Positions 6,240 through 62,371 of a stretch of DNA of 64,000 nt are shown here, one piece after another. The position numbers were made by a program, and so were the translations under genes. Below the pieces are notes generated by a model. That model did not search any database. It worked only from the letters and a program-made list of their open reading frames with translations, and had not been told where the DNA came from. The first letter of the stretch is position 1. Each line of letters starts with the position of its first letter. Origin of the DNA: Haliotis rubra (Eukaryota); the NCBI RefSeq assembly GCF_003918875.1, contig NW_025767102.1, positions 682,001-746,000 on the forward strand, in the 5' to 3' direction.

Positions 6240-6463
6240 TCTGTTTGGTTTTTTAACCCGGCACTCAGTAATATTCCAGCTATTTGACAGTGGTCTCTGC
6301 ACCAGACAGTGCATTGATTAACATCATGAACATCTTTTGACGCAATTGGGAAACGATGAAGTGCATCAACCAAATCAGCGAGTCTGACTGCCCAACCCCG
6401 TTAGTAGCCTTTTATGACAAGCATGGGTTGCTGAAGACTAATTGTAACATGGATCTTCACGGT
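6240..6463 (-). mobile_element. headless SINE family A (orthologous insertion at 16645-16873 in copy 2)
   Basis: Reverse complement of the CCGTGAAGATCC...AATATT(G)CTGAGTG...AAAC consensus. Confidence 0.8.
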
Positions 6464-7504
6464 TTCCAGATAACGGTAATGTAGTGTTGTAAATGACCTT
6501 GATCTCATATGTTTGTTGATATTCGCGCAAAATGCAGAAACCATCTACCCGAAAATAAACATCTATGTTAAATGTTACCAGTTACCGATAAGATATTGAT
6601 AGGCCAAAGAATATTTTTACAAAACAAATAAAAACGTTATCAAGACGCACTGGGTTTACAACAGTCCAAACTTAACGTCCAAAGCAAAACCAGATAACTG
6701 TAACAAACATATACATTGAATAACTATTTCTTGATTAATCCATTTTAGCCACCATCAAACATATGTGTATACTTTCTTTTGTCCGTCAGTTTCCTGGGTC
6801 CCCAGTTTATCATGACAAAAGTAGATTGAATTTACAATAGTTTAGTGAGCAGGAAAATCCATTCTAGGTTCGTTTTGTTTTAGCAGGGTTAATGGACACT
6901 GCATACGTAGACGGGTTAAACATGGTTGTTTCCAAACGAAATTAAATGAGGTAATTTCAAACAACTATTTTTATCGTCTATTAATTCAAGTTCCACTGTC
7001 TACTTTTTTTTTTTAATGTTCAATTATCCTAAGTACCCACAGACAATGTTACAGGTTTACACAAAGCTGAATGAAGATGTAAATGGGGGCTATTGAAGAT
7101 AGTAGCAGATTAGCAGATTCTGGTTGGATGCCAAAAATACGCAGATTTCAGTGTGTGAAGTCTGCAACTGCACACGTAGGCAATCTGACCACACACCGCA
7201 GTGAATAATCAATACTGTATATTGAAACCCACAGTTTCATGATTACCATTTCAAAAATGCAATACAATTGGTAAAATAAAGTGCATTCGCGAATATTCGG
7301 AATACTGGCACTGTTTAATGTGATGAATGAGTGCTCTCAACGTTCTTTATTTAACAATCGTTTCTGAATGTAGCAAGAATCCGATACTACTAAACAGGTA
7401 TCTCAACTTGGCAGGTAAAGAAGCATCAGGTCAGTTCAAAACCACCTCGAATTCTGTCGCTCTTATACCAGTATTTAGGTGCATCTAGCCTTCCACAACT
7501 GCAC

Positions 7505-15159: not shown

Positions 15160-15352
15160 GCTTTGTTTGATAATTGTTTAACGCCGCATTCGGTGGTCTG
15201 TAAATAATCGAGTCTGGACCAGACAATCCAGTGGCCAGCATCATGAGCATTGATCTACGTAATCATCGTGATCTACGATGTCATGAGTCAACCAAGTCTC
15301 TTACCACAAGCATATGTTGCTGAAGACCAATTCTAACCCGGATCTTCACTGG
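15160..15352 (-). mobile_element. headless SINE family A with internal deletion (shared with 32225-32418, absent from copy 3)
   Basis: Family A sequence with the same deletion in copies 1 and 2. Confidence 0.8.
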
Positions 15353-17975
15353 TTTTGTAGACATGAGTATGGGTAAGACTCGCGTCCTGTATTTTTAGAA
15401 CAGGGAACTGTGTTTAGCATGTAAATCTTATGACGAGGTCGATCATGTCGCATAGCAAATACGTTTTAGTTATTCAGTTGAAAATAATGCTCTCATACTA
15501 ACATATAGGATCATTTCTTCACATTTTGGTGCAACTAGATCCATCAAATCAAATTTAAAAGTTGGAAATGAAAGTGACGCCCACCACACTTACCACTGCG
15601 ACACACAGTAGCTGCCATCACTGTTACAAAATGAGAGACAAACGATTGAAATAACGAAACATGTCGGTATTAGAAATAATTAATGCTGCCAAATTATTGA
15701 AATGAAACCGTTATATTGTATACACTATATGACATTGTATCCAGAAACTGTCTGTGTCGACACGTTTGGGATGCCACTCAATACCATGGACTGACTGACT
15801 GAGTTTGGTTTTACGCCGCTTTTAGCAATAGTCCAGCAACATCACGGCGGCAATACCATGGAAGGTGGAACGTTTTTTAATTAAAACGACTGCCAACATC
15901 TTTTATTTGTCATAACGTCCTTGGCCTTATTCCTGTCCTTATCCTCTTTGGACATTCATACAAAAATAGCCTGGACAAGTACAGGATAGGGATATTGTTG
16001 AATCATTATATTTATGAAACGGATGATCTGAAAAAAATCGGCTTCGGATACTTTCTCAGGCTAAATGATTTTTAAAAATACAGCTAAAAGTATGTTTTAA
16101 GAAGTTTCCACACGCTCTAAACAACGTGATGGTGCTTAATCGTACAATTGGACTGCCATTCACATCACCGACTTCAAATCTCTGACAGCACCAGTTACCA
16201 GCACTCGACCCAGTCAGCAGGGGCAGGTTGACTCAATCCTTTGAGACGTTGCATGTGATACAAGTGTCATCCAATCGATGAAACTGACACGGAGGACTGT
16301 CATACTGACGTTGCGATGACAATCAGAGGTGCTTTCTACATGTGCTGGCGAAGCATGGTGGAAAATCCGTCTAATAATGACATTACCTGTATTGTGTATA
16401 TGTATAGATTGATGGATGGAACTAGTGAGTGAAACAAACAGGGGAAGAACAATATAAGTACTAGACTACCTAGGAACTCATTCTTGGTCATTGTCATATG
16501 ATCATAGTGGTTTTCAACTTATTATTATAAACAAATTCAAAGATTTGCCATTCATCAGTTCCCTGCTGATGGTACAATCGTGCAACGAATCCGTAAGAAT
16601 AACCATTTGTGGACCGTGTCTGATTCCAGGTAAGATTTGTGTGTTTGTTTGGGTTTGTAACGCAGCACTCATTAATATTCCATTTATGTGACAGTGGTCT
16701 GTAAATAGTGGACAAGACAGTCCATTGATTAACATCATGAACATCGATCGACGCAATTGGGGAACGATGAAGTGCATCAACCAAATCAGCGAGTCTGACT
16801 GCCCGACCCCGTTAGTAGCCTTTTATGACAAGCATGGGTTGCTAAGAGCCAATTGTAACATGGATCTTCACGGTTTCCAGATAACGGTAATGTAGTGTTG
16901 TAAATGGCCTTGATCTCATATGTTTGTTGATATTCGCGAAAAATGCAGGAAAACATATATGTTACATGTTACCAATTACCGATAACAAATTGCCAGGCAA
17001 AAGAAGGTTTTTATAAAACAATTAAAAACGCTATCAAAACATTACCTGGTTCACAACTCCAAACTTAATCTCCAAAGCAAAACTAGATAACCGTAACAAA
17101 CATATACAACGCTGTCGAATGCTTATTTTTTGTTTTATCTAATTTTAGACCCATTAAAAACATGTGTATAATTTATTTTATCCGGCAGTTTACCTGGTCC
17201 CCAGTTTGCCTTGACAGACAAGAGTAGTTTGATTTTTGCAAAAGTTTAGTGAACTGAACAATCCATTCTATGGAAGGCAACAGGCCCGTTTTGCTTTAGC
17301 AGAGTTCATGGGCATTGCATACGGCGACGGGTGAAATACATTGTTTGTGTTTGTAAATTATGATAAATGCTGGACAACAGAAACAGACAACTAGTTATAG
17401 CAAATGAGTGAGTGAGTGAGTTATTATTTAACGTCACATCGGCAATATTTCAGCCATATCGTGACGAGAACATTTGACATTGTAGTGGAATATGTATATA
17501 TTATAAAACCTGTCATCGAAGGACAGTAAAACAACTAGAATATCACACTTGGATTTAAAACTAGTGTGTAAGGTTAAAACTAATAGCACTATTAGGACAA
17601 TACAAGATAAAAACAGGCTATAGATCGCCAACAACTGAAGGTCGATCACCATACTAGGGACCATGGGGACTTACAGTACCTTGGCTACCTGCATGGACCC
17701 TAGTTGGATTTACACCATCCGTTCAGCTGCTGGCGATTGCAAGAAATGTTAGCTACAATTAAAATGACAAAAATGCTACGTTTAAAAATCCTGGTAAGTT
17801 TAAATTGACTTTCGAAGTTTTTGGACTTACGTACCCCCTCAGGGGGACAATATTTTTACGATTCTTCAACCCCCCTTGAGAGTACAGCCACTAACAATCT
17901 AAGTTACTAATCAAACTACCAATTATTAAAACACAGCTATTTACAGAACATATTAATCAAAATTCATTAATGAAA

Positions 17976-20900
17976 TCAATTTCTTTTAAAAAAACCAAGA
18001 ATTAAATGAAGATGAACAGAATTAAAAAGATCCTTAACAGTTTTAACATTGAAATATTTATCCCTTATGATGGAGAATTCAACACAGTCAAGCAGGAGAT
18101 GCTTGACCGTGACTCTCTCATCACAAGGGATACAAAACGGAGGATCTTCACTATTTAACAAATATTTGTGAGTGTACCTTGTATGGCCAATACGACATCG
18201 TCGCATGATGACCTCTTCAAATCTGGACTGACAACCCAAGTAAGTGTAACCGATATAGGGTTTTATTGCATGTAATTTATTAATACCTACTTGGGTGTCC
18301 CACTTCTTCTGCATCAGATCACGGATGTAGGTTCTAATGCAAGCTTTGTAATCAGAGTAAGGAAGAAGAAGTGGTGTCACAGATTTATTTAGTGCTGCCT
18401 TGGCAGCAAGATCGGCCATTGTATTCCCAGAAATGCCAACGTGGCTGGGTAACCAACAGAAGACGATGTCGCATTGGCCTGTAGCAAGATCATTATATAA
18501 TTCGATTATTTCAATTAAAAGTGGATGTTTGCAAGAGAGATTTTTAATAGCCTGAAGGCAAGAAAGAGAGTCTGAAAATATTATATACTGGTTATGTTTT
18601 GGATGTCTTTGAATATATTTAAGAGCTGTTAAGATGGCGTTTGCTTCTGCTGTAAATATAGAGCTGTTATCAGGTAGTCTAGAAGATATTGTTCTGGCTC
18701 CAATGACAGTGGCACATGCCACTGCGCCACCGTCCTTGGACCCATCTGTAAATAAGGATTTGTATGTGTTATATTTGATTTTTAATTGATTATATTCTTG
18801 TTTATACTGTAATTCATTAGTTCCAGATTTCTTAAATTTTGTCAGAGTTAGGTCAACTTCAGGCCTAACCAATTGCCAAGGAGGAGAAGAAAGAAGACGG
18901 GAAGGAGCTATATTCTCCAGCTCAATGCCGGCAGCAGTAATAAATGGCTTCATTCTGAGCCCCAAGGGCGGAACAAGAGAAGATTTATTGTTGTACAAAT
19001 CCTCATAAAGAGGATTAAAGATACAATGAAATGCAGGATTCGATTCGTTAGAATATAGTTTTGTAAGATATTGTAAAGATAATTTTATACGTCGATGGGC
19101 AAGAGAAGGCTCATCTGCTTCGACGTAGAGACTGTCAACTGGAGAAGTTCTAAAAGATCCAAGACAAAGTCTCAGACCTTGGTGGTGGACAGAATCAAGT
19201 AGTTTTAGATTGCTTTTGCAGGCTCCACCATATACGATGGAGCCATAATCAAGTTTCGAGCGGACCAATGAGCGATATAGGTGGAGGAGGGTAGCTTGAT
19301 CCCCTCCCCACTTTGTGTTGGAAACAACTTTCAACAAGTCAAGTGCCTTCAGGCATTTAGTTTTAAGGGATTTAATATGTGGCAGAAACGTTAAGTGCGA
19401 GTCAAAAATAATACCCAAGAACTTGGCCTCCTTCACAACTTTAATGGGAGTGCCATTTAGAGAGAGTTCAGGGTCTTTATGCGGTTTGTATTTACGGCAG
19501 AAATGTATACAATTAGTTTTGGATTTTGAAAATTTAAAGCCGTTTTCAAGACACCATTTATTTATCTTGTTTAAACACAACTGCAGTTGCCGTTCAATAG
19601 TATGCATTTTCTTACCGCGACATGAAATATTAAAATCATCCACAAAAAGTGATCCATCAATTGAATCGTTTAAAACCTTGGATAAACTGTTGATCTTTAC
19701 GCTAAATAAAGTGACAGACAAAATACTGCCTTGTGGGACACCCTGATCCTGATTGTAATGGTCAGACAAGGTTGAACCCACTCGGACTTGAAAGTGCCTG
19801 TCTTTTAAAAAATTGTGAGACAAAATGAGGCAAACGACCTCTTAAACCGAAATCATGCAAATCTTTCAAAATGCCATGCTTCCAAGTAGTATCATACGCT
19901 TTCTCCAGATCGAAGAAAATTGATACTACGTGTTGTTTATTTACAATTGCATTTTTTACATAGGATTCTAATCGTACCAAATGGTCGATAGTACTTCGGT
20001 TTTTCCGGAAACCACATTGAATATTAGTAATGAGATTATTGGTTTCCAAATACCACACTAAACGATTATTTACCATTCGTTCCATAGTTTTGCAAACACA
20101 GCTAGTCAAGGATATAGGTCGATAATTAGATGCATCTGAATGGTCTTTGCCAGGCTTAGGTATAGGAACAACAATAGCATTTCGCCAAGAAGGAGGGAAT
20201 TTCCCTGAAGTCCAAATTTCATCAAAAATGTCTAAAAGCACTTCAAGACATGATGCAGGCAAATGTTTCAGGAGCTGATAGTGAATATTATCAGCCCCTG
20301 TTGCTGTATCATGAGCCTGCCCAAGGGCAGCTTGTAGCTCATGTAGTGAAAATACTTCGTTGTAATCTTCTCCGTTTTCGGAGTGGAAATTAATGTTTTT
20401 CTTTCCTCAGTTTTCTGATATTTCTGAAATTCGGGAAGATAGTTTGATGAAGCCGAGTGTTGAGCTAATGTTTCGCCAAGTTTGTTTGCAATGTCGGAAG
20501 CATCTTCAAGAAAGTGATCTCCTTCCTTAATATGTTTAACACTCGGTTTAGAACCTTTGCCTTTGATCCTTTGGGACCATATTCCACACCTTTGATATAG
20601 GTGTGTGGAATTAATCTTGGAGACGTAGGTTCTCCATGATTGACGTTTATTTTGTTTGAAGGTACGGCGAGCTTTAGCTCTGGTTACCTTAACGTTATTC
20701 AAATTATGTACAGTTGGATGCTTGCGGAAATATTTTTCCGCTTTTTTCCTATTTTCCTAGCCTGTTTGCAGTCGCCATCAAACCATGGCTTACGAATGTG
20801 TGGATTTGCAGAGGACTTAGGAATGGAATCGGTAGCTATAGCATTCAGTTCATCTGAAAACAACTGAATGGGGTCAGCAATATTCTGGAACTTTGTATGT

Positions 20901-21646
20901 TTCAATTTCTCAGTACATAACGAACTGAATTGAGACCAGTTAGCCTTTGAAAAATTCCACCTTGATGAGGGTGGAACGTCAGACGGGTTATTTACTGTTA
21001 GAAATGTAGGAAAGTGGTCACTGCCACATAAATCATCATGAACTGACCACGAAAATTCATGTAGAAGGGTCGCATCAGTGAGTGTAAGGTCCAAGGCAGA
21101 ATAGCTACCCGTTGCAGGGTGTAAATATGTATGAGTACCATCATTAAAAATACAAAGACTATTGTCAGAAATGAAATCCTCCAATACTTTGCCCTTGGTA
21201 TTAATACCATTACCTCCCCATAAAGGATTATGTCCATTCAAATCCCCCATGAGTATGCAGGGCTGAGGGAGCTGGTCATATAGAGATTGAAGTTCAGATT
21301 TCTGGAGGTTTGAAGATGGAGGGATATATAAAGAGCATACAGTAAATGCAATGTGTAAAGTTAGTCGGACTGCAACAGCCTGAAGATTCGTAGTAAGTTG
21401 AACAGGGCTGTGTATTATGCCCTGCCTCACTAAGATAGAGGAGCCTCCATTGGCTTTGCCACCCGGGGGTGAAAAGGAATGATGAGAATTGTATTGACGT
21501 AAGTCAAATGTATCTGTCTGTTTAAGGTATGTTTCTTGGAGACAGAAAATTGATGGCTGAAAATCTTGTACTAATAATTGTAGTTCATTTAAATTGGCTC
21601 TAAGTCCTCTGCAGTTCCACTGGATAAGTGTATTACCCTGACTCAT
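17976..21646 (-). CDS. LINE ORF2: AP endonuclease, reverse transcriptase, RNase H, C-terminal CCHC; split by a few frameshifts
   Basis: QWNCRG, CLQET, GDLNGH, SDHFP (APE); YRPISLTS, FFDLEKAYD, QGVPQGSILS, FVDD (RT); FTDGSK, AEANAI, FSDSLS, WLPSHVGISGNTMAD (RNase H); CIPC..KHLLLDC. Frame changes between ~20720 and ~19800. Confidence 0.93.
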
Positions 21647-21647
21647 G

Positions 21648-22841
21648 TTATATTAGGTGGTAGTACAGGGATCTGGACCGTGGCGAATGACTATTGTGAC
21701 GCACACGGTGGTGTGGAGTGACATCCATGTCCTCCAGAAGTTGATATTTGTTAAATATTTGTACCGGATCCCGTTGACCTTTCGGTACTCGATCCGATTT
21801 TTGGGAATAGTTGACTGACTTGCTGGCATTTACTATTACAGGTGACGGTGAACGAGATTGTTTACGCGATGGTGATTTTGTTTGCGTAGATGCAACATTT
21901 TTCGTTTGACGTATTGAATATTTCGCAGTCTTCACCCAGGTGATATCGGTCTGGCACTCTACAGATTTAACAGTCTTAGTAGGCTGACGGGTAACTACTG
22001 CAGAGTATGATACAGATGCAGTTGGAGTGTTAGCAGATGTTACCAAACGTTTAGCCTCTGCAAAAGAGATACTCTTTTCATGCTTCAGTTTAACAATTTG
22101 ATGTTGTAGTTGCCAGACTGGGCAGGATTTTGATGAAGCAGCGTGGTCCCCAGAACAATTAGCACATTTAGGGCTGTTTGGGCAGTCTAAAGTGTCATGC
22201 GCAGGTTCTCCACAACGGTGACATTTCTTGCTATTGGTACATGATTGGGCACCATGACCAAACTTTTGACATGAGTAACACCGAAGTGGATTTGGTATGT
22301 ACTTGTCTACACCAATATTACAGTAACCTGCTTTGATGGATGGTGGTGGAACTGGAACAGAAAAGGTAAACAGATAAGTATTCAACTTAATAGTTTGACC
22401 ATTCTGCCTGCTTGTAAAACGTTTCACAAACGTTACACCCTGGTCGTTCAGTTCAGAAGCTATCTCATCCTCAGACATGTCTGCTAGACAACGGTCTCTA
22501 TCTCTGACAATGCCCTTGGAACTGTTGAGAGTTTTGTGTGGTGACACAGTAACTGGTACGGAAACAAGATGTTTGACAGCCAATAGTGTAGCTGATTGAA
22601 AGGCTGATTTACATTCTAGTAAGATACAGCCAGATCGCATCCTTTTCATTGACACAACATCACCAGCGATACCATAAATCGCTTTTGATAGAGCAAACGG
22701 ATTCAATTTCAATGGACCATCATCCGGAGAAGAAATCACCAAAAATCGAGACCAATGGTCAGATTTGTTTTTTGAGACGGTGTCATCATCAGAAGATGTA
22801 CTATCTTCTAAAGTACGTTTGAGTTGTTTTGGAGGTATCAT
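21648..22841 (-). CDS. LINE ORF1, gag-like nucleic-acid-binding protein
   Basis: YIPNPLRCYSCQKFGH..CHRCGEPAH..CANCSGDHAASSKSCP (three CCHC knuckles); stop is 1 nt before the ORF2 ATG. Confidence 0.93.
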   Translation of the reverse strand: MIPPKQLKRTLEDSTSSDDDTVSKNKSDHWSRFLVISSPDDGPLKLNPFALSKAIYGIAGDVVSMKRMRSGCILLECKSAFQSATLLAVKHLVSVPVTVSPHKTLNSSKGIVRDRDRCLADMSEDEIASELNDQGVTFVKRFTSRQNGQTIKLNTYLFTFSVPVPPPSIKAGYCNIGVDKYIPNPLRCYSCQKFGHGAQSCTNSKKCHRCGEPAHDTLDCPNSPKCANCSGDHAASSKSCPVWQLQHQIVKLKHEKSISFAEAKRLVTSANTPTASVSYSAVVTRQPTKTVKSVECQTDITWVKTAKYSIRQTKNVASTQTKSPSRKQSRSPSPVIVNASKSVNYSQKSDRVPKGQRDPVQIFNKYQLLEDMDVTPHHRVRHNSHSPRSRSLYYHLI

Positions 22842-23294
22842 GGTAAGTTAATAAAGGTTCATCATCCCAGCTCCCCACCCACCACGGAGTATCAGGAAGA
22901 CAATGCCATATGCCAGTGGGTGTCCAACTAGCAGCACCAAGGATACTGGGATGATATACTCCAGCAGAAGTATCAATTCAAGATCAATAAATCCACCAGA
23001 TTGACCCATGAGCCATCGCCTTCTGGGCATTAAGACTCTAGGTAATTACATTTTGATCTATGTAGAATCAATAAAAACATTGTAGGTCTATAAGTGATTT
23101 GACCAAGACCCCATGGCAAGCACTAGAAAATATCAATATTGTGCAAAAAACAAGTAACATGCACAGGGCTCGGCATGACCAGCCGATTGGTAGAACCGGG
23201 CCCATTCTACCACCCGTCTAGGTGAAGTAAGGGTCGAAGTGGTGTATTGGGCAAAGGAACACTGTTCCTGGAGCCCTTGCCCTCAACCACCAGA

Positions 23295-23375
23295 ATCCCG
23301 TCCTCCACCGACACAGGGGCGCAACCCACGGCAAACGGGTTGGTGGACCTAATATCCCCCCGGGTCCACAACGGG
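23295..23375 (-). promoter_or_regulatory. structured 5' UTR motif of the LINE, shared with the 5' end of SINE family A
   Basis: CCCGU-U-GUGGACC-CGGGGGGAUAUUA-GGUCCAC-CAACCC-GUUUGCCGU...ACGGGAU versus SINE CCCGU-GAAGAUC-CGGGUUAGAAUU-G(G/A)UCUUC-AGUAACCC-AUGCUUGUCGU...ACGGGAU. Confidence 0.6.
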
Positions 23376-23378
23376 GGT

Positions 23379-23437
23379 TGAAGGGCGCTTAGCGTGACCC
23401 AGCACCCACCACGAGGAGGTGGCCCTTCATGGGTGCC
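23379..23437 (-). ncRNA. HDV-like self-cleaving ribozyme (minimal, essentially no P4) at the LINE 5' terminus
   Basis: GGCACCC A UGAAGGGC C ACC UCCUCGU GGU GGGUGCU GG GUCACG CUAA G C GCCCUUCA. P1 is 7 bp with a G1.U wobble, P2 is 8 bp, P3 is ACC/GGU, L3 is UCCUCGU with P1.1 CC/GG, J4/2 is CUAA (candidate catalytic C at 23392). G1 abuts the TSD. Confidence 0.85.
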
Positions 23438-31231: not shown

Positions 31232-31470
31232 GTAAGTGAGTGAGTGAGTTAGGTTTTACGCCCCACTCAGCAATATTCCAACCTTTTGCAGGTGATCTGT
31301 AAATAATCGAATCTGGACCAGACAATCTAGCGATCAGCAGCAGGAGCATCGATCTACGCAATTGGGATACGATGACATGTGTTAACCAAGTCAGCGAACA
31401 TGACCACCTGATCCCGTTAGTCGCCCAAGCATTGGTTACTGAAGAGCAATTCTAACCAGGACCTTAGCGA
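31232..31470 (-). mobile_element. headless SINE family A at the site where copy 2 lacks the minisatellite
   Basis: (GAGT)n tail plus family A body. Confidence 0.85.
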
Positions 31471-32769
31471 ATGATTACTCCCAACTTCGAAGTACCTGGA
31501 AACACTCCTATAGAAGTACCGGAGGTTGTCAAGGTGACCGTCACATGTGTCTCTATCCAACTACTGGATACATTCAGCTAATCCATTTATACAGGCAGTG
31601 TCATGTAGGTGAGAGTTAAATAGATTGCTTACCCAGTGAGTCGTCATGTTCCATAGTTTCTTTAAGACAATGTTAACCTTGCTTGTGTCAATTCAAACCC
31701 TTTTTCGTCTCTTGGAACTAAGGCTTCTTTTTTTAAATATTTTGGAAAAAAACATTGTGTGATTTTAAAAGTTTTAGCCCAAACCATCTATACAGCGAAG
31801 ACGATCGTTATAAACGTCATGAACACGTCCCAGGCTTACAAAGTGTTTTAGTTTTAGCTGAAAAAGTGTTGTTCAATCTCGTGTATGCAGTATTCCTGCA
31901 GAGACGATTAATGTCAAAAGCATTCATTGAAACATCGTTAAGTGTTTCCAACTTAAAAACCTATACAGTGTCTGTGCCATTTGTACTGATTGTTTCTTGA
32001 AAACGCGAAAACATATGATGGGATTTGGACAGCCGTCAATGCTGATTCATCAAATTAAAAACCTATAGTGTTTGTACTGACTGGTTCGTGAAAACGCGAG
32101 AGAGAAAATATTATGGGATTTGGACAGCTGGTTCATCTTCAGACACGACAGCCTGTATTCTTCTCGTTATTTGTTTTTTTGTAGATCTCGACAGCTTCAG
32201 TTTTGGTCGTAGACATGTTTTATTTTTTGCTTTGTTTTGGTAAGTGTTTAACGCCGCATTCGGTGGTCTGTAAATAATCAAGTCTGGACCAGACAATCCA
32301 GTGGTCAGCATCATAAGCATCGATCTACGTAATCGGGATACGATGTCATGTGTCAACCAAGTCTCTTACCACAAGCATATGTTGCTGAAGACCAATTCTA
32401 ACCCGGATCTTTCCGGGTTTCGTAGACATGAGTATGGGTTGAATAACAGAACAGAGTATGAGTTGAATAACTGTTTCAGAACAAGGAACTGCATTTAACA
32501 TGTAAACCATATCGCATAGCAAATACGTTTGAGTTATTCAGTTGCAAATAATGCTCTCATACTAACATAATGGATCATTTCTTCACATTCTAGAGCAAGT
32601 AGATCATTCATGCACCACATTTACCACTGAGACACACATCATCATCACAATTTAACTCCACTCTTACAAAATGAGACACTACACTAATTGTAACTCCCTC
32701 ACCGTAACTTGTTATTTCGACTTTTTACTCATCGATTCTATTATTTCTTCATTTCAATTATTAAGTACC

Positions 32770-48938: not shown

Positions 48939-49147
48939 TTAACACATATGGTGAACAACAAGTGATGATGCTGAAATATAGACGGTAAGGAAATCAATGA
49001 GTGATTAGTGAGTTGGGTTTTATGCAGCCTTTAGCAATGTTCCAACTATACTGCGGTGCAGGACTCCAGGAAGGCTATTCACTGGTAACCCCGTGGGTAC
49101 CCTAAACACGTAAATCTTAGGTTTTGGTACGTGTGTGTAAATATCAT

Positions 49148-49370
49148 CCGTGAAGATCCGTGTTAGAATTGGCCTTCAGCAAACCATGCTTGTCCTAAGA
49201 GGAGACTAACGGGATCGGGTGGTCAGGCTCGCTGACTTGGTTCACACATGTGCTCGCATCCCAATTGCGTAGAAAGATGTTGATCACTGAACTGTCAGGT
49301 CCTCGATTATTTACAGGCCGCCGTCATATACCGGACATTTGGCTGAGAGCAGCAAACAAACAAACAAACA
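49148..49370 (+). mobile_element. headless SINE family A
   Basis: Starts CCGTGAAGATCC; (AAAC)n tail. Confidence 0.85.
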
Positions 49371-50455: not shown

Positions 50456-50686
50456 AGACAGACCAGGACTGGGCCCCAGTGTTTAAACTGATGAATCATA
50501 CACTATCTATGCTGCACCTACTGAGGCGAGTCCGCGTGTCAAGTAGACAAGGAGATTTCAAGATTTCAGCGTAGTCAACGTGGCTGATTTGTGTTGGGCT
50601 CTCAGTCATAAATTCTGTTGAGATCAGTAGACAGGAATCCCGATCTACATCGGGAAACCAGGAAAAACGCGCAACAGGCATGACAA

Positions 50687-50924
50687 CCCGTGAAGATCCG
50701 GGTTAGAATTGGTCTTCAGTAACCCATGCTTGTCGTAAGAGGCGATTAACGGGATCTGTTTGTCAGAATTGCTGACTTGGTTGACACATGCCATGGTATC
50801 AACATTGCGTAGATCGATGCTCATGATGTTGATCACTGGATTGTCTGGTCAAGACTCGATTATTTACAGACCGCCGCCATATATCTGATAAACTTACTCA
50901 CTCACTCACTCACCCACTCACTCC
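50687..50924 (+). mobile_element. headless SINE family A with TSD-like flanks
   Basis: Starts CCCGTGAAGATCC with (ACTC)n tail; CAGGCATGACA on both sides (50675-50685 and 50925-50935). Confidence 0.9.
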
Positions 50925-51739
50925 AGGCATGACATTCAGGATTTGTACGCGAGACCGTATGCTGGTGGCATAGAACCGGGCTTCATCTAATGATCGAGGT
51001 ACGAGCTGACTGCACGGGATAAAAGGGGGACTATATGTTCCCTTGCTAATTTGAATGTTAATGCTTTTGTTCACTTGTTATAGAGTGACATGAATCATAC
51101 TTTCATAATGTAACTGAAGATAACTGACTATCGAAATACATTCAGAACTATCTCACTCAGACTATTTACCAGGCAGAATCTCATGTGAATCAAATATACT
51201 GGGGAAAAAAACATGTATACGGAAAATATTCTGAAAATATTTTAATTATTCCCTGGACGAATTCCTTATTAATAAACTGGGAAAATCACACATTTGCAAA
51301 AGTAGAATTGGTAAAAACATTACAAACTTTGTCAAAACGTTAGAAACCCCATGAAAACCCGGGTTATAATTTATCTTCAGCAACCCATGCTTGTCGTAAG
51401 GGGCGACTAACAGGATTAGGTGGTCCTGCGCCCTGACTTAGTCGACACATGTCATCACCATTGTCATTCGGGGTGCGACATTGAAAACAAAGAAACAAAA
51501 CTTAGCTGAAAACAATCGCCAAAACACTGCATACTTAGGTTCAAAACACTACTAAACTGGCGTACAAAAGAAACTAAACATTTGGTGCTTTGGCGTGGTT
51601 TTTAGCATACATTCTTTTGTGTAAACTATTCCGAAAACTTAACAACATATATCATCAACCGCTTGTACCTTTTGATAGCTTACTGACCGAAATTATATTA
51701 ATAAAACCCGTTCGAAGTATATAAGAAATCTGGGCATTT

Positions 51740-53206: not shown

Positions 53207-53545
53207 GTGGTGGACTTGAGCATGCATTCTTTTGTGTAAACTTTTCCGTAAATTAAAGAACATGTATTTGATCAATCGCTTGTACCTTTTGGTAGCTTAG
53301 TGACTGAAAGTGTGAAAAGGTTAGAGCTGAACAAGAAGATAAATTACCCCTGTGTTATGTTTTTTTCTTCAAGGGTTATCTAATTGTCAACGTGCTCGCC
53401 GACAGGGGAGCTAGCTGAGAATTTTACGTTGACGAATACGAAAGAACATGTTGAGTCCAAACTTCTTCAGCTGGTTATATAATATACAGAATTCATCAAG
53501 AAATAAGTAGAGCAGTGATTACAACATTTCTATGATGGGACAGGC

Positions 53546-53805
53546 TCGTGAAGATCCGGGTTAGAATTGATCTTCAGTAACCCATGCTTGTCATAAGAGT
53601 CGACTAACGGAATCGGGTGGTCAGACTCTCTGACTTGCATGGTTGACACATGTCATCGTATCCCAATTGCGTAGATCGATGCTCATGCTGTTGATCACTG
53701 GATTGTCTGGTCCGGACTCGATTATTTACAGAATTCCATACAGCTGGGATATTGCTGAGTGTGGCGTCAAACTAAACTCACTCACTAACTCACTCACTCA
53801 CTCAC
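53546..53805 (+). mobile_element. headless SINE family A (full length)
   Basis: CTCGTGAAGATCCGGGTTAG ... GGCGTCAAACTAAACTCACTCAC. Confidence 0.9.
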
Positions 53806-54257: not shown

Positions 54258-54562
54258 AGTGAGTGAGTTAGTGAGTTTAGTTTTACGCCGCACTCAGCAA
54301 AATCATATTCCAGCTGTATGGTGGCGGTCTGTACGGTAAAATAATCGAGTCTGGTGGTCATGAAATAGACAATCCAGTGATCAACAGTATGAGCATCGAT
54401 CTACGTAATTGGGACACTGTGACATGTGTCAACCATGAAGTCTAGATCTACCATTTCTGATAGCCTGACCACCATTGATTCGGTTAGTCATTAATCCCAT
54501 TTTCTTACTGACAAGCATAACGGAGTTACTGAAGATCAGTTCTAACCCGGACCTTCACGGGT
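54258..54562 (-). mobile_element. family A SINE with many small insertions
   Basis: Family A order is preserved despite many 1-12 bp insertions. Confidence 0.75.
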
Positions 54563-58534: not shown

Positions 58535-58718
58535 CAACATATCTGTCAGCTGCGACTAAAATATACTTCTTTGGATAGGCATGTTGTTCATTTCTCTTTG
58601 CTACAATGTGTGCTCTTATATAGTGCTACTGGGAAGCTACCCATGAAAACCAGGTAAGAATTGATCTTCATCAACCTCTGCTTGTGTTAAGAGGCCACTA
58701 CCTGGGTCGGGTGGGCAG
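58535..58718 (-). repeat. 184-bp inverted copy of 62291-62474 inserted into a family A SINE (58497-58947)
   Basis: Exact reverse complement by inspection; flanked by the direct repeat ACTCAGCAACAT. Confidence 0.92.
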
Positions 58719-59981
58719 CGCACTCAGCAACATTCCCCCTCTATGGAGGCGGTCTGTAAGTAATCGAGTCTGGACCAGACAATCCATTGATCAACAGCAT
58801 GAGCATCGATCTACGTAATTGGGATATGATGACATTTATGTCAACCAAATCAGCGAGCCTGACCACCCGATACCGTTAGTCGCCTCTTAGGACATGCATG
58901 GGTTACTGAAAATCAATATTTTAATTCTAACCCTGATCTTCACGGGTATCTTAAAGACGCAAAACCAAGTAAATGCATTACATTCAGAATCTACAAACAA
59001 GACGTCATTCAAAAGTGTGTTTATTATAAAATTCACAAAACCAGATGATAGACAAATATGTACATGTATATTCCATATCTGACCTTGACATGTTCTTTAA
59101 CGAAGAAAGTCTTTCCGAGTAAATAACAGGTGCATAAAAAAATTGGCAAAGTAAGTCCAGCAAAATAACTGCACTCGACCTTGCCTTCGAAATTCACTGT
59201 CGAAAAATGCATCCTGGCGTTTTTTATCAATTACTTTATTAACAGATTCTTAATTTCAGAACCGTTCTTTTTTCCTTCCATCCGATTCCGTTCAGAAGAA
59301 TAAACTTCAAAGTAAGCCAGCAGTGGAAAAGAGTAAATTAATCCTTTGACATATCATAAAAAAATATTTTCAATTCTGTTTCTAATCCACAGTTTCTTTA
59401 TCACGCCCAGCCAAACACAATTTGAAAGATACAGTTGAGTTTCTTTTAAAAAACACAGAAATTTTAATTTGACCAAGGACTTTTTGAGAATCTGCGAGCC
59501 AAGTAATTAAAAAAACGTTTCTAATGGATTCAACAGAAGAAAAAGTTTAAATTGGTGAAATCTTTCTTTCTTGCTTTGTGGTTGGCAATATAAACGAAAA
59601 AAGGTTACACAACACAATGACAGCATTGCGTAAGACTTATATACCATTAAAAAAAGTAGGGGATATTCCATTTTGCGAGCATACCACGAATGCCAATGCC
59701 AATGCATATGAGAAAAGTAATATATATCCATACAGATGAAACATTTCCAAAGGAGTGGAATAAATTGTCACATTTTCCCTTAATTTCTCTTCATCATATG
59801 TTTCCTGCTTGGCTTCATCATTTGCATTTTATCAATCTTAAAATTCCAATATCTCCTACTGTTTTTGGATGGAATAATATATCCAACCGACACAACTTGC
59901 ATCATCCTTGACCACTCGTCTCTTTCCGGTACAGATGACGGAAACACGCGAGTGGTGACGAACATATCCTGGATTTTGGAA

Positions 59982-62149: not shown

Positions 62150-62371
62150 AGTGAGTGAGTGAGTTTAATTGTACGCCGCACTCAGCAATATTCCAGCTAT
62201 ATGGCGGTGGTCTGTAAATAATCCAGTGATCAATATCATGAGCATCAATCTACGCATTTGGGAACCGACGTGTCAACCAAGTCAGCGAGCCTGCCCACCC
62301 GACCCAGGTAGTGGCCTCTTAACACAAGCAGAGGTTGATGAAGATCAATTCTTACCTGGTTTTCATGGGTA
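62150..62371 (-). mobile_element. headless SINE family A in intron 2
   Basis: (GAGT)n tail; 5' end CCCATGAAAACC. Confidence 0.8.

What the first reader, a model, noticed from the sequence alone, without database searches (positions are those of the whole stretch)
50687..50760. Headless SINE family begins with a pseudoknot-capable motif that covaries with the LINE 5' UTR just after the ribozyme
Seen in sequence: about ten family A copies start at essentially the same point, CCCGTGAAGATCC, with no tRNA A/B-box head (49148, 50687, 51348, 53546 on +; 6463, 15352, 16873, 32418, 54562, 58947, 62371 on -). In this head UGAAGAUC pairs with G(G/A)UCUUCA and GGGUUA pairs with UAACCC in crossing order (H-type pseudoknot). 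A GUCG/CGAC hairpin follows, and CCCGU/ACGGG closes the fold. The LINE has the same layout at 23375-23295, with the first stem reading GUGGACC/GGUCCAC (compensatory changes) and the same CCCGU...ACGGGAU ends. Inference: family A is a bipartite non-autonomous derivative (5' UTR motif plus 3' tail) of this LINE group. The fold would be functional, as an internal promoter, ORF2 docking site, exonuclease block or self-cleaving RNA, and would explain the uniform 5' ends.
Basis: partly seen in the sequence, partly recalled or inferred. Interest (0 to 1): 0.82.

Follow-up and report, generated by a model that had tools for sequence, protein, structure and literature searches.

The report
Known LINE-headed SINE of abalone
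This is a copy of an already described kind of short jumping gene (an "LP-SINE") that has no tRNA head because its first ~64 bases come from the folded leader of its partner LINE; the kind is known, but this genome also shows the partner LINE and the compensating mutations that keep the leader's hairpin.

Summary
Family A is a ~250-bp SINE, flanked by target-site duplications, with at least 10,000 copies. Full-length copies all begin at (A)CCCGTGAAGATCC, with no tRNA head.

The kind is already published. Matetovici et al. 2016 (PMC4758252) described "LP-SINEs", including Haliotis ones, whose ~70-bp head comes from a Nimb-type LINE 5' UTR. Earlier notes of this scan on other DNA of this genome reached the same reading.

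- **Head:** it is clearly homologous (z about 14, about 77% identity) to the segment just after a minimal HDV-like ribozyme in LINE lineages B, C and D elsewhere in the genome.
- **Window LINE:** this lineage (A) lost about 39 nt of that segment.
- **Tail:** the SINE tail matches the LINE 3' end.
- **Hairpin S1:** it is supported by three compensatory pairs with G·U intermediates.
- **Pseudoknot:** the proposed crossing helix is weakly supported and cannot form as a classical H-type knot. A different knot, 5' C-run with loop G-run, fits at least as well.
- **5' end:** in LINEs the module does not set the RNA 5' end; 25 of 26 copies keep the ribozyme upstream.

Function remains untested.

The parts
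50686..50923 (+). Focal family A (LP-type) SINE copy, with an 11-bp target-site duplication CAGGCATGACA at 50675-50685 and 50924-50934. This copy has lost part of the tail region.
50686..50758 (+). LINE-derived head module. S1 is 50691-50698 with 50711-50718. Hairpin 3 is 50732-50735 with 50743-50746, loop UAAGAGG. The closing stem is 50687-50690 with 50750-50753. The alternative knot pairs 50686-50689 with 50700-50703.
   Evidence: Covariance model R1 gives 80.8 bits. Pair counts. Homology to the LINE module.
49146..49218 (+). Family A SINE head.
   Evidence: 61.3 bits.
51347..51419 (+). Family A SINE head.
   Evidence: 64.3 bits.
53544..53616 (+). Family A SINE head.
   Evidence: 70.3 bits.
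6392..6464 (-). Family A SINE head. This is an old copy, duplicated with its flank at 16803-16875.
15284..15353 (-). Family A SINE head with an internal deletion. It shares its flank with the copy at 32349-32418.
16803..16875 (-). Family A SINE head.
31408..31472 (-). Family A SINE head, decayed and lacking hairpin 3.
   Evidence: 23 bits.
32349..32418 (-). Family A SINE head.
54475..54562 (-). Family A SINE head with insertions.
58867..58947 (-). Family A SINE head with an 8-nt insertion in the S1 loop.
62299..62370 (-). Family A SINE head. A duplicate of it lies at 58639-58710 on the + strand.
17405..23437 (-). Full-length LINE-A copy (6033 bp) with a 9-bp target-site duplication TTTGCTATA at 23446-23438 and 17404-17396. 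ORF1 is 22841-21648. ORF2 is frameshifted and carries AP-endonuclease, reverse-transcriptase and RNase H domains.
23381..23437 (-). Minimal HDV-like ribozyme at the exact 5' end of the LINE.
   Evidence: Rfam RF02682 gives 25.4 bits, E 0.012, below the gathering score. About 99%-identical genome copies start at this base.
23322..23376 (-). Remnant of the head-type module in LINE-A. S1 (GUGGACC/GGUCCAC) and the G-rich loop are kept. The S2 3' strand and hairpin 3 are lost through a 39-nt deletion.
   Evidence: 13.5 bits, E 0.036.
17405..17466 (-). LINE-A 3' tail shared with the SINE: a stem-loop followed by (TCAC)n.
   Evidence: 78% over 63 nt, E 1e-8.

Best explanation
Family A is the abalone LP-SINE, a SINE with a LINE-derived head as described by Matetovici et al. 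2016. It is a ~250-bp non-autonomous retroposon copied by an I/Nimb-type LINE (AP endonuclease, reverse transcriptase, RNase H), of which the window holds a full-length copy.

Shown here:
- Its last ~60 nt are the LINE's 3' stem-loop plus (TCAC)n, the part a stringent LINE reverse transcriptase recognises.
- Its first ~64 nt are homologous to the structured 5' UTR segment that follows a 57-nt HDV-like ribozyme in the partner LINE lineages, within 1 nt of the ribozyme's end.
- The ~120 nt between them have no match in the window LINE.
- The head is constrained as sense-strand RNA. It has an 8-bp hairpin (S1) kept by compensatory change and a 4-bp hairpin with a conserved UAAGAGG loop. Its loop G-run can pair with the 5' C-run or with a 3' C-run.

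Inferred: the module is a portable cis-acting 5' RNA element that both LINE and SINE RNAs need for a step in which host or element factors recognise the 5' end. My rough odds are:
- about 0.35 that it acts in transcription initiation, together with the terminal bases;
- about 0.25 that it acts in assembly or completion of the retrotransposition complex;
- about 0.15 that it protects the 5' end;
- about 0.05 that it cleaves itself.
For: - **Ends:** copies share one 5' end, have unrelated flanks and carry target-site duplications.
- **No tRNA or known RNA family:**
- **Copy number:** 10,171 exact matches to a 28-nt head pattern in the genome.
- **Head:** it aligns to the post-ribozyme module of LINE lineages B, C and D with a score of 27-32 against 9.6 +/- 1.6 for shuffles, and 46 of 60 columns identical (sequences).
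- **Tail:** homologous to the 3' ends of LINE-A and LINE-B.
- **LINE domains:**
- **S1:** 88% of cells paired. Pairs 8-31 (UA/AU), 9-30 (GC/AU) and 12-27 (CG/UG/UA) change on both sides. No shuffle of 500 reaches the observed covariation score, and sliding the partners drops pairing to 35-46%.
- **Literature:** LP-SINEs in Haliotis, with a ~70-bp head shared with Nimb-17_LMi, I-3_DR and RTE-9_CPB, and an ACTAAA hexamer before the tail repeats as in these copies.
Against:
- The S1 covariation comes from essentially one lineage split (SINE against LINE) plus G·U intermediates. These are few independent events.
- Folding energies are not better than for shuffles.
- LINE-A, the youngest and most abundant lineage found, lacks hairpin 3 and the original S2 3' strand. 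The whole module is therefore not needed for LINE amplification.
- No experiment or read data bears on function. Only assembled contigs of RNA runs were on offer.
Confidence: 0.85

Rival explanations
1. The head is an internal promoter, the 'LINE promoter' reading of Matetovici et al. It recruits a polymerase that starts at the SINE's first base, and that alone gives the uniform 5' ends.
For: - Uniform 5' ends with no carried-over upstream flank require a start or cut set from inside the element.
- The same head was recruited by several unrelated SINE bodies and sits in LINEs of two clades.
- SINE nt 1-14 match nt 4-17 of the LINE-A ribozyme at 13 of 14 positions, so a start-site region may have been kept.
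Against: - In LINEs the module lies 58 nt inside the RNA. 25 of 26 copies chosen without regard to upstream sequence keep the full ribozyme, and none starts at the module.
- G·U intermediates and compensatory pairs point to an RNA-level constraint.
- No A box was found, and the B-box-like stretch lacks the invariant C, judged by eye against the standard consensus from general knowledge.
Confidence: 0.3
2. The head is a self-cleaving or host-processed RNA that cuts at its own 5' edge, releasing the SINE RNA from read-through transcripts.
For: - The 5' ends are precise.
- The head has the strand order of an HDV-type P1/P2 knot: 5' C-run with loop G-run, crossing S1.
Against: - No Rfam ribozyme match on the head, even at E up to 10.
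- It lacks the P3/L3 region and the J4/2 catalytic region.
- LINE copies keep the ribozyme attached upstream of the module, so no efficient cut occurs there.
- No SINE copies preceded by a ribozyme were found.
Confidence: 0.07
3. On origin: the head is not simply the post-ribozyme module. It is the LINE 5' end with the ribozyme core deleted, made of ribozyme nt 4-16 joined to the module loop. S1 would then be a rebuilt copy of the ribozyme's P2 stem, and the SINE start would correspond to the LINE start.
For: - SINE nt 1-14 match the LINE-A ribozyme at 13 of 14 positions, but the module's own 5' arm region at only 9 of 13.
- The S1 arms GAAGAUC/GAUCUUC differ from P2 (GAAGAGC/GCUCUUC) by a single compensated pair.
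- Two earlier first-reader notes of this scan made the same suggestion.
Against: - Module and ribozyme 5' halves are already alike (10 of 14), so only 3 of 4 substitutions need to coincide with the ribozyme bases. That is about P 0.1 by chance, by my own calculation.
- No intermediate families were found.
Confidence: 0.3
4. The head is a functionless leftover of the LINE RNA from which the SINE arose, and the pairings are chance.
For: - Folding energy is no better than for shuffles.
- A crossing-helix motif arises in 2.4% of shuffles.
- LINE-A thrives without part of the module.
Against: - Three S1 pairs changed on both sides with no pair broken, with G·U intermediates in older subfamilies.
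- Several SINE families acquired the head independently.
Confidence: 0.08

Closest known systems
LP-SINEs (Hdi_LP/Hmi_LP, Lsa_2, Sgl_LP, Oco/Oed_LP), Matetovici et al. 2016, Genome Biol Evol 8:253, PMC4758252
   Same: These are short TSD-flanked retroposons with short tandem-repeat tails and no tRNA head. Their ~70-bp head is homologous to the start of Nimb-clade LINE 5' UTRs. They were described in Haliotis, and the ACTAAA hexamer lies before the tail repeats.
   Different: - The paper gives no structure analysis of the head and calls the partner LINE unidentified.
- It places the module at the LINE 5' end.
- Here candidate partner LINEs are in the same genome, the module follows an HDV-like ribozyme, and S1 covaries.
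L1Tc/NARTc and ingi/RIME with the Pr77 hallmark in trypanosomatids (PMC3383444, PMC3185411)
   Same: Autonomous and non-autonomous elements share only a short 5' terminal module, which is associated with an HDV-like ribozyme.
   Different: In Pr77 the shared 77 nt are themselves both the ribozyme and the promoter. Here the SINE lacks the ribozyme core and shares the segment after it.
R2 SIDEs (Eickbush and Eickbush 2012, PMC3414825)
   Same: Non-autonomous elements built from the 5' and 3' ends of a ribozyme-bearing LINE.
   Different: SIDEs keep the active ribozyme and are plain internal deletions. Family A has no ribozyme and has a foreign ~120-nt body.
Stringent-type tRNA SINE/LINE pairs such as UnaSINE1/UnaL2 (from general knowledge; UnaL2 is cited in PMC4758252)
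   Same: SINE and LINE share a 3' stem-loop plus tandem repeats, which the LINE reverse transcriptase recognises.
   Different: Those SINEs have tRNA-derived pol III heads. Family A does not.

Membership tests
LP-SINE | Short non-autonomous element flanked by variable target-site duplications. | tested here: met
   duplications directly flank the element (11 bp at the focal copy), and upstream flanks are unrelated.
LP-SINE | Head of about 70 bp homologous to the 5' UTR of Nimb-type LINEs instead of a small-RNA head. | tested here: met
   z 11-14 against LINE lineages B, C and D; no tRNA or Rfam family; the LINE has AP-endonuclease, RT and RNase H domains.
LP-SINE | 3' end with short tandem repeats and a tail shared with a LINE. 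| tested here: met
   (TCAC)n, and about 60 nt aligned to the 3' ends of LINE-A and LINE-B.
LP-SINE | Sequence identity with the published Hdi_LP/Hmi_LP consensus. | not testable with these tools
   Figures and supplements are not held as text. Only the ACTAAA hexamer and the genus-level context agree.
   an 8-bp S1 and a 6-bp GGGUUA/UAACCC helix.
   Read from the sequence: only 1 nt (G) links the S1 3' strand to the S2 3' strand, yet it would have to span 8 bp of S1. The two helices have similar energies (-7.8 and -6.7 kcal/mol) and compete. A side-by-side arrangement was not modelled.
   S1 is clear. S2 is 75% paired, with one pair on both sides (GC:10, UA:7) and a G·A state in the older subfamily A2; the rival helix, 5' C-run with the same G-run, is 88.5% paired and shows the same kind of change.
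HDV-like ribozyme (for the SINE head) | P1, P1.1, P2, P3/L3 and J4/2 with a catalytic C. | tested here: not met
   no HDV-family hit on the head at E up to 10. The LINE's own ribozyme is detected. Only P1-like and P2-like pairings can be drawn.
tRNA-derived SINE | tRNA-like head with A and B boxes. | tested here: not met
SIDE (internally deleted LINE) | The whole element is collinear with the LINE apart from one deletion. | tested here: not met
   SINE nt 65-186 have no match in the window LINE. The interior of LINE-B was not compared.

The most novel reading that the evidence does not exclude
The LP head may be a core-less offshoot of the LINE's own HDV-type fold: a P1-like 5' C-run/G-run helix crossing a P2-like S1. 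It would work as a portable 5'-end module for retrotransposon RNAs that lack a normal cap-dependent start, for example by marking or shielding the 5' end. That would explain why unrelated SINEs and LINEs of two clades across phyla picked it up.
Probability: 0.12. Interest if true: 0.7.

Novelty: already known. Interest (0 to 1): 0.35.

Why it matters
LP-SINEs are the only reported SINEs whose head comes from a LINE. Which polymerase transcribes them, and what the head does, has been open since 2016.

This genome offers a clean system for that question:
- at least 10,000 SINE copies;
- very young partner LINE lineages (copies about 99% identical to one another or to the window copy);
- the head module lying just behind a self-cleaving ribozyme;
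- a natural deletion variant (LINE-A);
- compensatory changes showing that the constraint acts on the RNA.

Together these make the simple "promoter at the very 5' end of the LINE" reading less straightforward, and they give concrete constructs to test.

Tried and rejected
- **Direct alignment to the window LINE:** the SINE head against the window LINE 5' UTR is not significant.
- **Folding energy:** uninformative against shuffles.
- **Viral collection:** three pattern scans returned only chance hits in phage-like contigs with no S1 stem. The earlier scan note that the shape occurs in a few viruses was therefore not reproduced.
- **Metagenomes:** one scan found a single contig, PEAW01035497.1, carrying a copy of the same SINE. 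It adds no new lineage.
- **Intermediate forms:** a search for LINE-type S1 with the SINE continuation, or the reverse, gave one decayed copy and nothing else.
- **SINE copies preceded by a ribozyme:** 15 matches, about the number expected by chance. The five fetched (those with 0-2 nt between the CTCTTC match and the head) have no ribozyme.
- **Expression and RNA 5' ends:** only assembled contigs of possible RNA runs were on offer. Contigs cannot show starts and break at repeat edges.
- **Paper supplements:** none are held as text, so there was no direct comparison with the published consensus.
- **More flanking DNA:** Short targeted stretches were fetched instead.

Full report
**Observation**

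The motif CCCGTGAAGATCC occurs 9 times in the window at up to 2 mismatches, against 0.6 expected. BLAST of the focal copy and a multiple alignment show 12-13 copies of a ~250-bp repeat. Their homology begins at one base, (A)CCCGTG, and their upstream flanks are unrelated except where a copy was duplicated together with its flank.

A search of the window's own 1.38-Gb assembly gave copies about 90% identical to the focal one. In 33 of them, aligned with 40 nt of flank, homology again starts at the same base, and target-site duplications are visible next to it. The focal copy is 50686-50923, between two copies of CAGGCATGACA.

Among 40 copies met by chance in 348 kb of fetched DNA, 21 start within the first 8 nt. 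The others are 5'-truncated at scattered points, as usual for retroposons copied by a LINE. A 28-nt head pattern has 10,171 exact matches in the genome. ARAGORN finds no tRNA in the window or in 29 SINE loci, and Rfam finds nothing on the SINE at E up to 10. The 'headless, uniform 5' end' observation is therefore correct.

**The LINE in the window**

A full-length element lies at 23437-17405 on the minus strand, between 9-bp duplications TTTGCTATA.
- It encodes ORF1 and a frameshifted ORF2 with AP-endonuclease, reverse-transcriptase and RNase H domains. This is the I/Nimb type of architecture.
- Its first 57 nt give a sub-threshold match to HDV-type ribozyme models (RF02682, 25.4 bits, E 0.012).
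- Forty genome copies, about 99% identical, begin at exactly that base.
- The last ~60 nt of the SINE align to its 3' end: 78% over 63 nt, E 1e-8, both ending in (TCAC)n.

**Is the SINE head the LINE leader?**

Against the window LINE the answer from plain alignment is no. The best local alignment is matched by 231 of 1000 shuffles and is not even at the claimed place.

A genome search with the HDV model then returned 30 ribozyme-headed LINE 5' ends. They fall into the window's lineage (A) and several others (B, C, D, E, F). In the latter, the sequence after the ribozyme is plainly SINE-like. It includes the hairpin GTCGTAAGAGGCGAC almost letter for letter. More copies were fetched to separate lineage states from decay.

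The SINE's first 60-64 nt align to these modules with a score of 27-32, against 9.6 +/- 1.6 for shuffles (z 11-14). 46 of 60 columns are identical with lineage B. The alignment starts within 1 nt of the end of the ribozyme's P2 strand.

Lineage A equals the others minus 39 nt: the S2 3' strand, hairpin 3 and a spacer. Lineage E has an A-type ribozyme and loop but keeps the full module, which shows that A lost the segment. A covariance model built from SINE and LINE modules scores the window LINE at only 13.5 bits, E 0.036.

**Structure**

I counted pairs on a 26-sequence alignment of SINE subfamilies A1 and A2 and of LINE lineages B to F.

| Helix | Cells paired | Changes seen |
|---|---|---|
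| S1 (8 bp) | 88% | 8-31 UA/AU; 9-30 GC/AU; 12-27 CG, UG, UA |
| Hairpin 3 (4 bp) | 94% | wobble changes only |
| CCCG/CGGG closing stem | 37.5% | breaks in most LINE rows: lineage B has AAGGG, and lineages with ACGGG have it about 50 nt further on |
| 5' C-run with loop G-run (4 bp) | 88.5% | outer pair CG:11, AU:7 |

- **S1.** Three pairs change on both sides, and the U·G state sits in the older SINE subfamilies. No shuffle of 500 reaches the observed covariation score, and sliding the partners drops pairing to 35-46%. The wobble intermediates only work on the sense strand, so the constraint is on RNA. The events are few, essentially the SINE/LINE split, so this is good evidence but not overwhelming.
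The older subfamily A2 has G·A at the covarying pair, and lineages C and D keep only GGGG/CCCC. Sterically, S1 and S2 leave a single G to cross 8 bp of S1, which a classical H-type knot cannot do. As nested alternatives the two helices have similar energies and compete.
- **Rival knot.** The 5' C-run can pair with the same loop G-run. This helix has comfortable loops of 1-2, 1 and 6-7 nt, and its outer pair changes in the same way. The data cannot choose between the two knots.
- **Single-sequence statistics are weak.** Folding z-scores are -0.5 to -1.2, and 2.4% of shuffles give a stem of at least 8 bp plus a crossing 6-bp helix.

**What sets the 5' end?**

In 26 lineage B copies chosen by the sequence after the ribozyme, 25 carry the whole ribozyme with unique DNA upstream. 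One is truncated inside the ribozyme, and none starts at the module. In the LINE, then, the module neither starts nor cuts the RNA at its own edge. I found no SINE copies preceded by a ribozyme and no intermediate families.

One observation keeps a promoter reading alive. SINE nt 1-14 match nt 4-17 of the lineage A ribozyme at 13 of 14 positions, and the S1 arms equal the ribozyme's P2 arms apart from one compensated pair. The SINE start may therefore correspond to the LINE start, with the ribozyme core deleted. Because the ribozyme's 5' half and the module's 5' half are themselves alike (10 of 14), this is not statistically separable from point mutation of the module (about P 0.1, my own calculation).

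**What is known**

Matetovici et al. 2016 (PMC4758252) described LP-SINEs in Littorina, Haliotis, oysters and scallops.
- They are TSD-flanked, with tandem-repeat tails and a ~70-bp head shared with the 5' ends of Nimb-17_LMi, I-3_DR and RTE-9_CPB.
- The Haliotis and Ostrea tails carry AATATA or ACTAAA before the repeats. Family A has ACTAAA.
- The authors proposed a promoter role, left the polymerase open, and called the partner LINE unidentified.
- They discuss no fold for the head.
- A search for later work on LP-SINEs found only that paper, and a search on HDV-like ribozymes in non-LTR elements and SINEs found nothing that links them to LP heads.

Earlier notes of this scan on other pieces of this genome had already reached the same reading. 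Their remark that the shape also occurs in a few viruses was not reproduced by three viral scans. One metagenome contig carries a copy of the same SINE.

**Verdict**

But it rediscovers a published class.

The detailed claim about the window LINE is only partly right. S1 is homologous and the rest is mis-aligned. The specific pseudoknot is unproven and has a sterically better rival.

The increments over the literature are:
- candidate partner LINEs in the same genome;
- the module's position right behind an HDV-like ribozyme;
- RNA-level covariation of S1 and of the shared 3' stem;
- a natural deletion variant that still amplifies.

Function is untested.

Noticed in passing
window 17405-17466 (-); SINE tails in L002-L030; LINE-B tails L125:542-602 and L127:473-530: The 3' tail shared by SINE and LINEs holds a 6-bp stem. 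It reads CGCCGC/GCGGCG in the SINE and CGUCAC/GUGACG in LINE-A and LINE-B, which is two compensatory pairs. The terminal repeat is (TCAC)n in the SINE and LINE-A but (TCAAC)n in LINE-B, so LINE-A-type elements look like the closer driver.
   Followed up: partly
L063:678-774(-), L066:1726-1822(+), L079:1056-1150(-), L086:2367-2461(+), L043:699-766(+): An older SINE subfamily (A2) has a LINE-like loop (CGGGGTAGAATA), the U·G state of S1, and a tandem duplication of about 27 nt of the hairpin-3 region. It is an evolutionary intermediate between the LINE module and the young SINE head.
   Followed up: partly
window 23437-23424 (-) compared with 23376-23362 (-); L061-L090: The ribozyme's first 14-16 nt (P1 3' half, J1/2, P2 5' arm) resemble the start of the module that follows it (10 of 14 identical). 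Both are followed by a complementary arm. The module may be a partial, core-less duplicate of the ribozyme.
   Followed up: partly
window 23322-23376 (-) compared with L079:1563-1632 (+) and L092:83-156 (+): LINE-A, the window's lineage (its copies about 99% identical; thousands of candidate matches), carries a 39-nt deletion in the leader that removes hairpin 3. After the deletion, a CAACCC from the next hairpin sits where the lost CACCCC was, possibly through microhomology.
   Followed up: partly
window 6392-6464 and 16803-16875 (-); 15284-15353 and 32349-32418 (-); 58639-58710 (+) and 62299-62370 (-): Three pairs of SINE copies share their flanking DNA. The window therefore contains local segmental or inverted duplications, or larger composite repeats that carried SINE copies along.
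   Followed up: no
L128 (metagenome contig PEAW01035497.1) 1-190 (-): A contig filed as metagenomic carries a shortened copy of the same SINE with a (TCAC)n tail. It is probably gastropod DNA in an environmental or host-associated sample.
   Followed up: no
L065 and L068 (ribozyme loci): Two ribozyme-headed copies run straight from the ribozyme into much later leader sequence. These are further internal deletions of the 5' UTR, so the leader seems prone to deletion.
   Followed up: no
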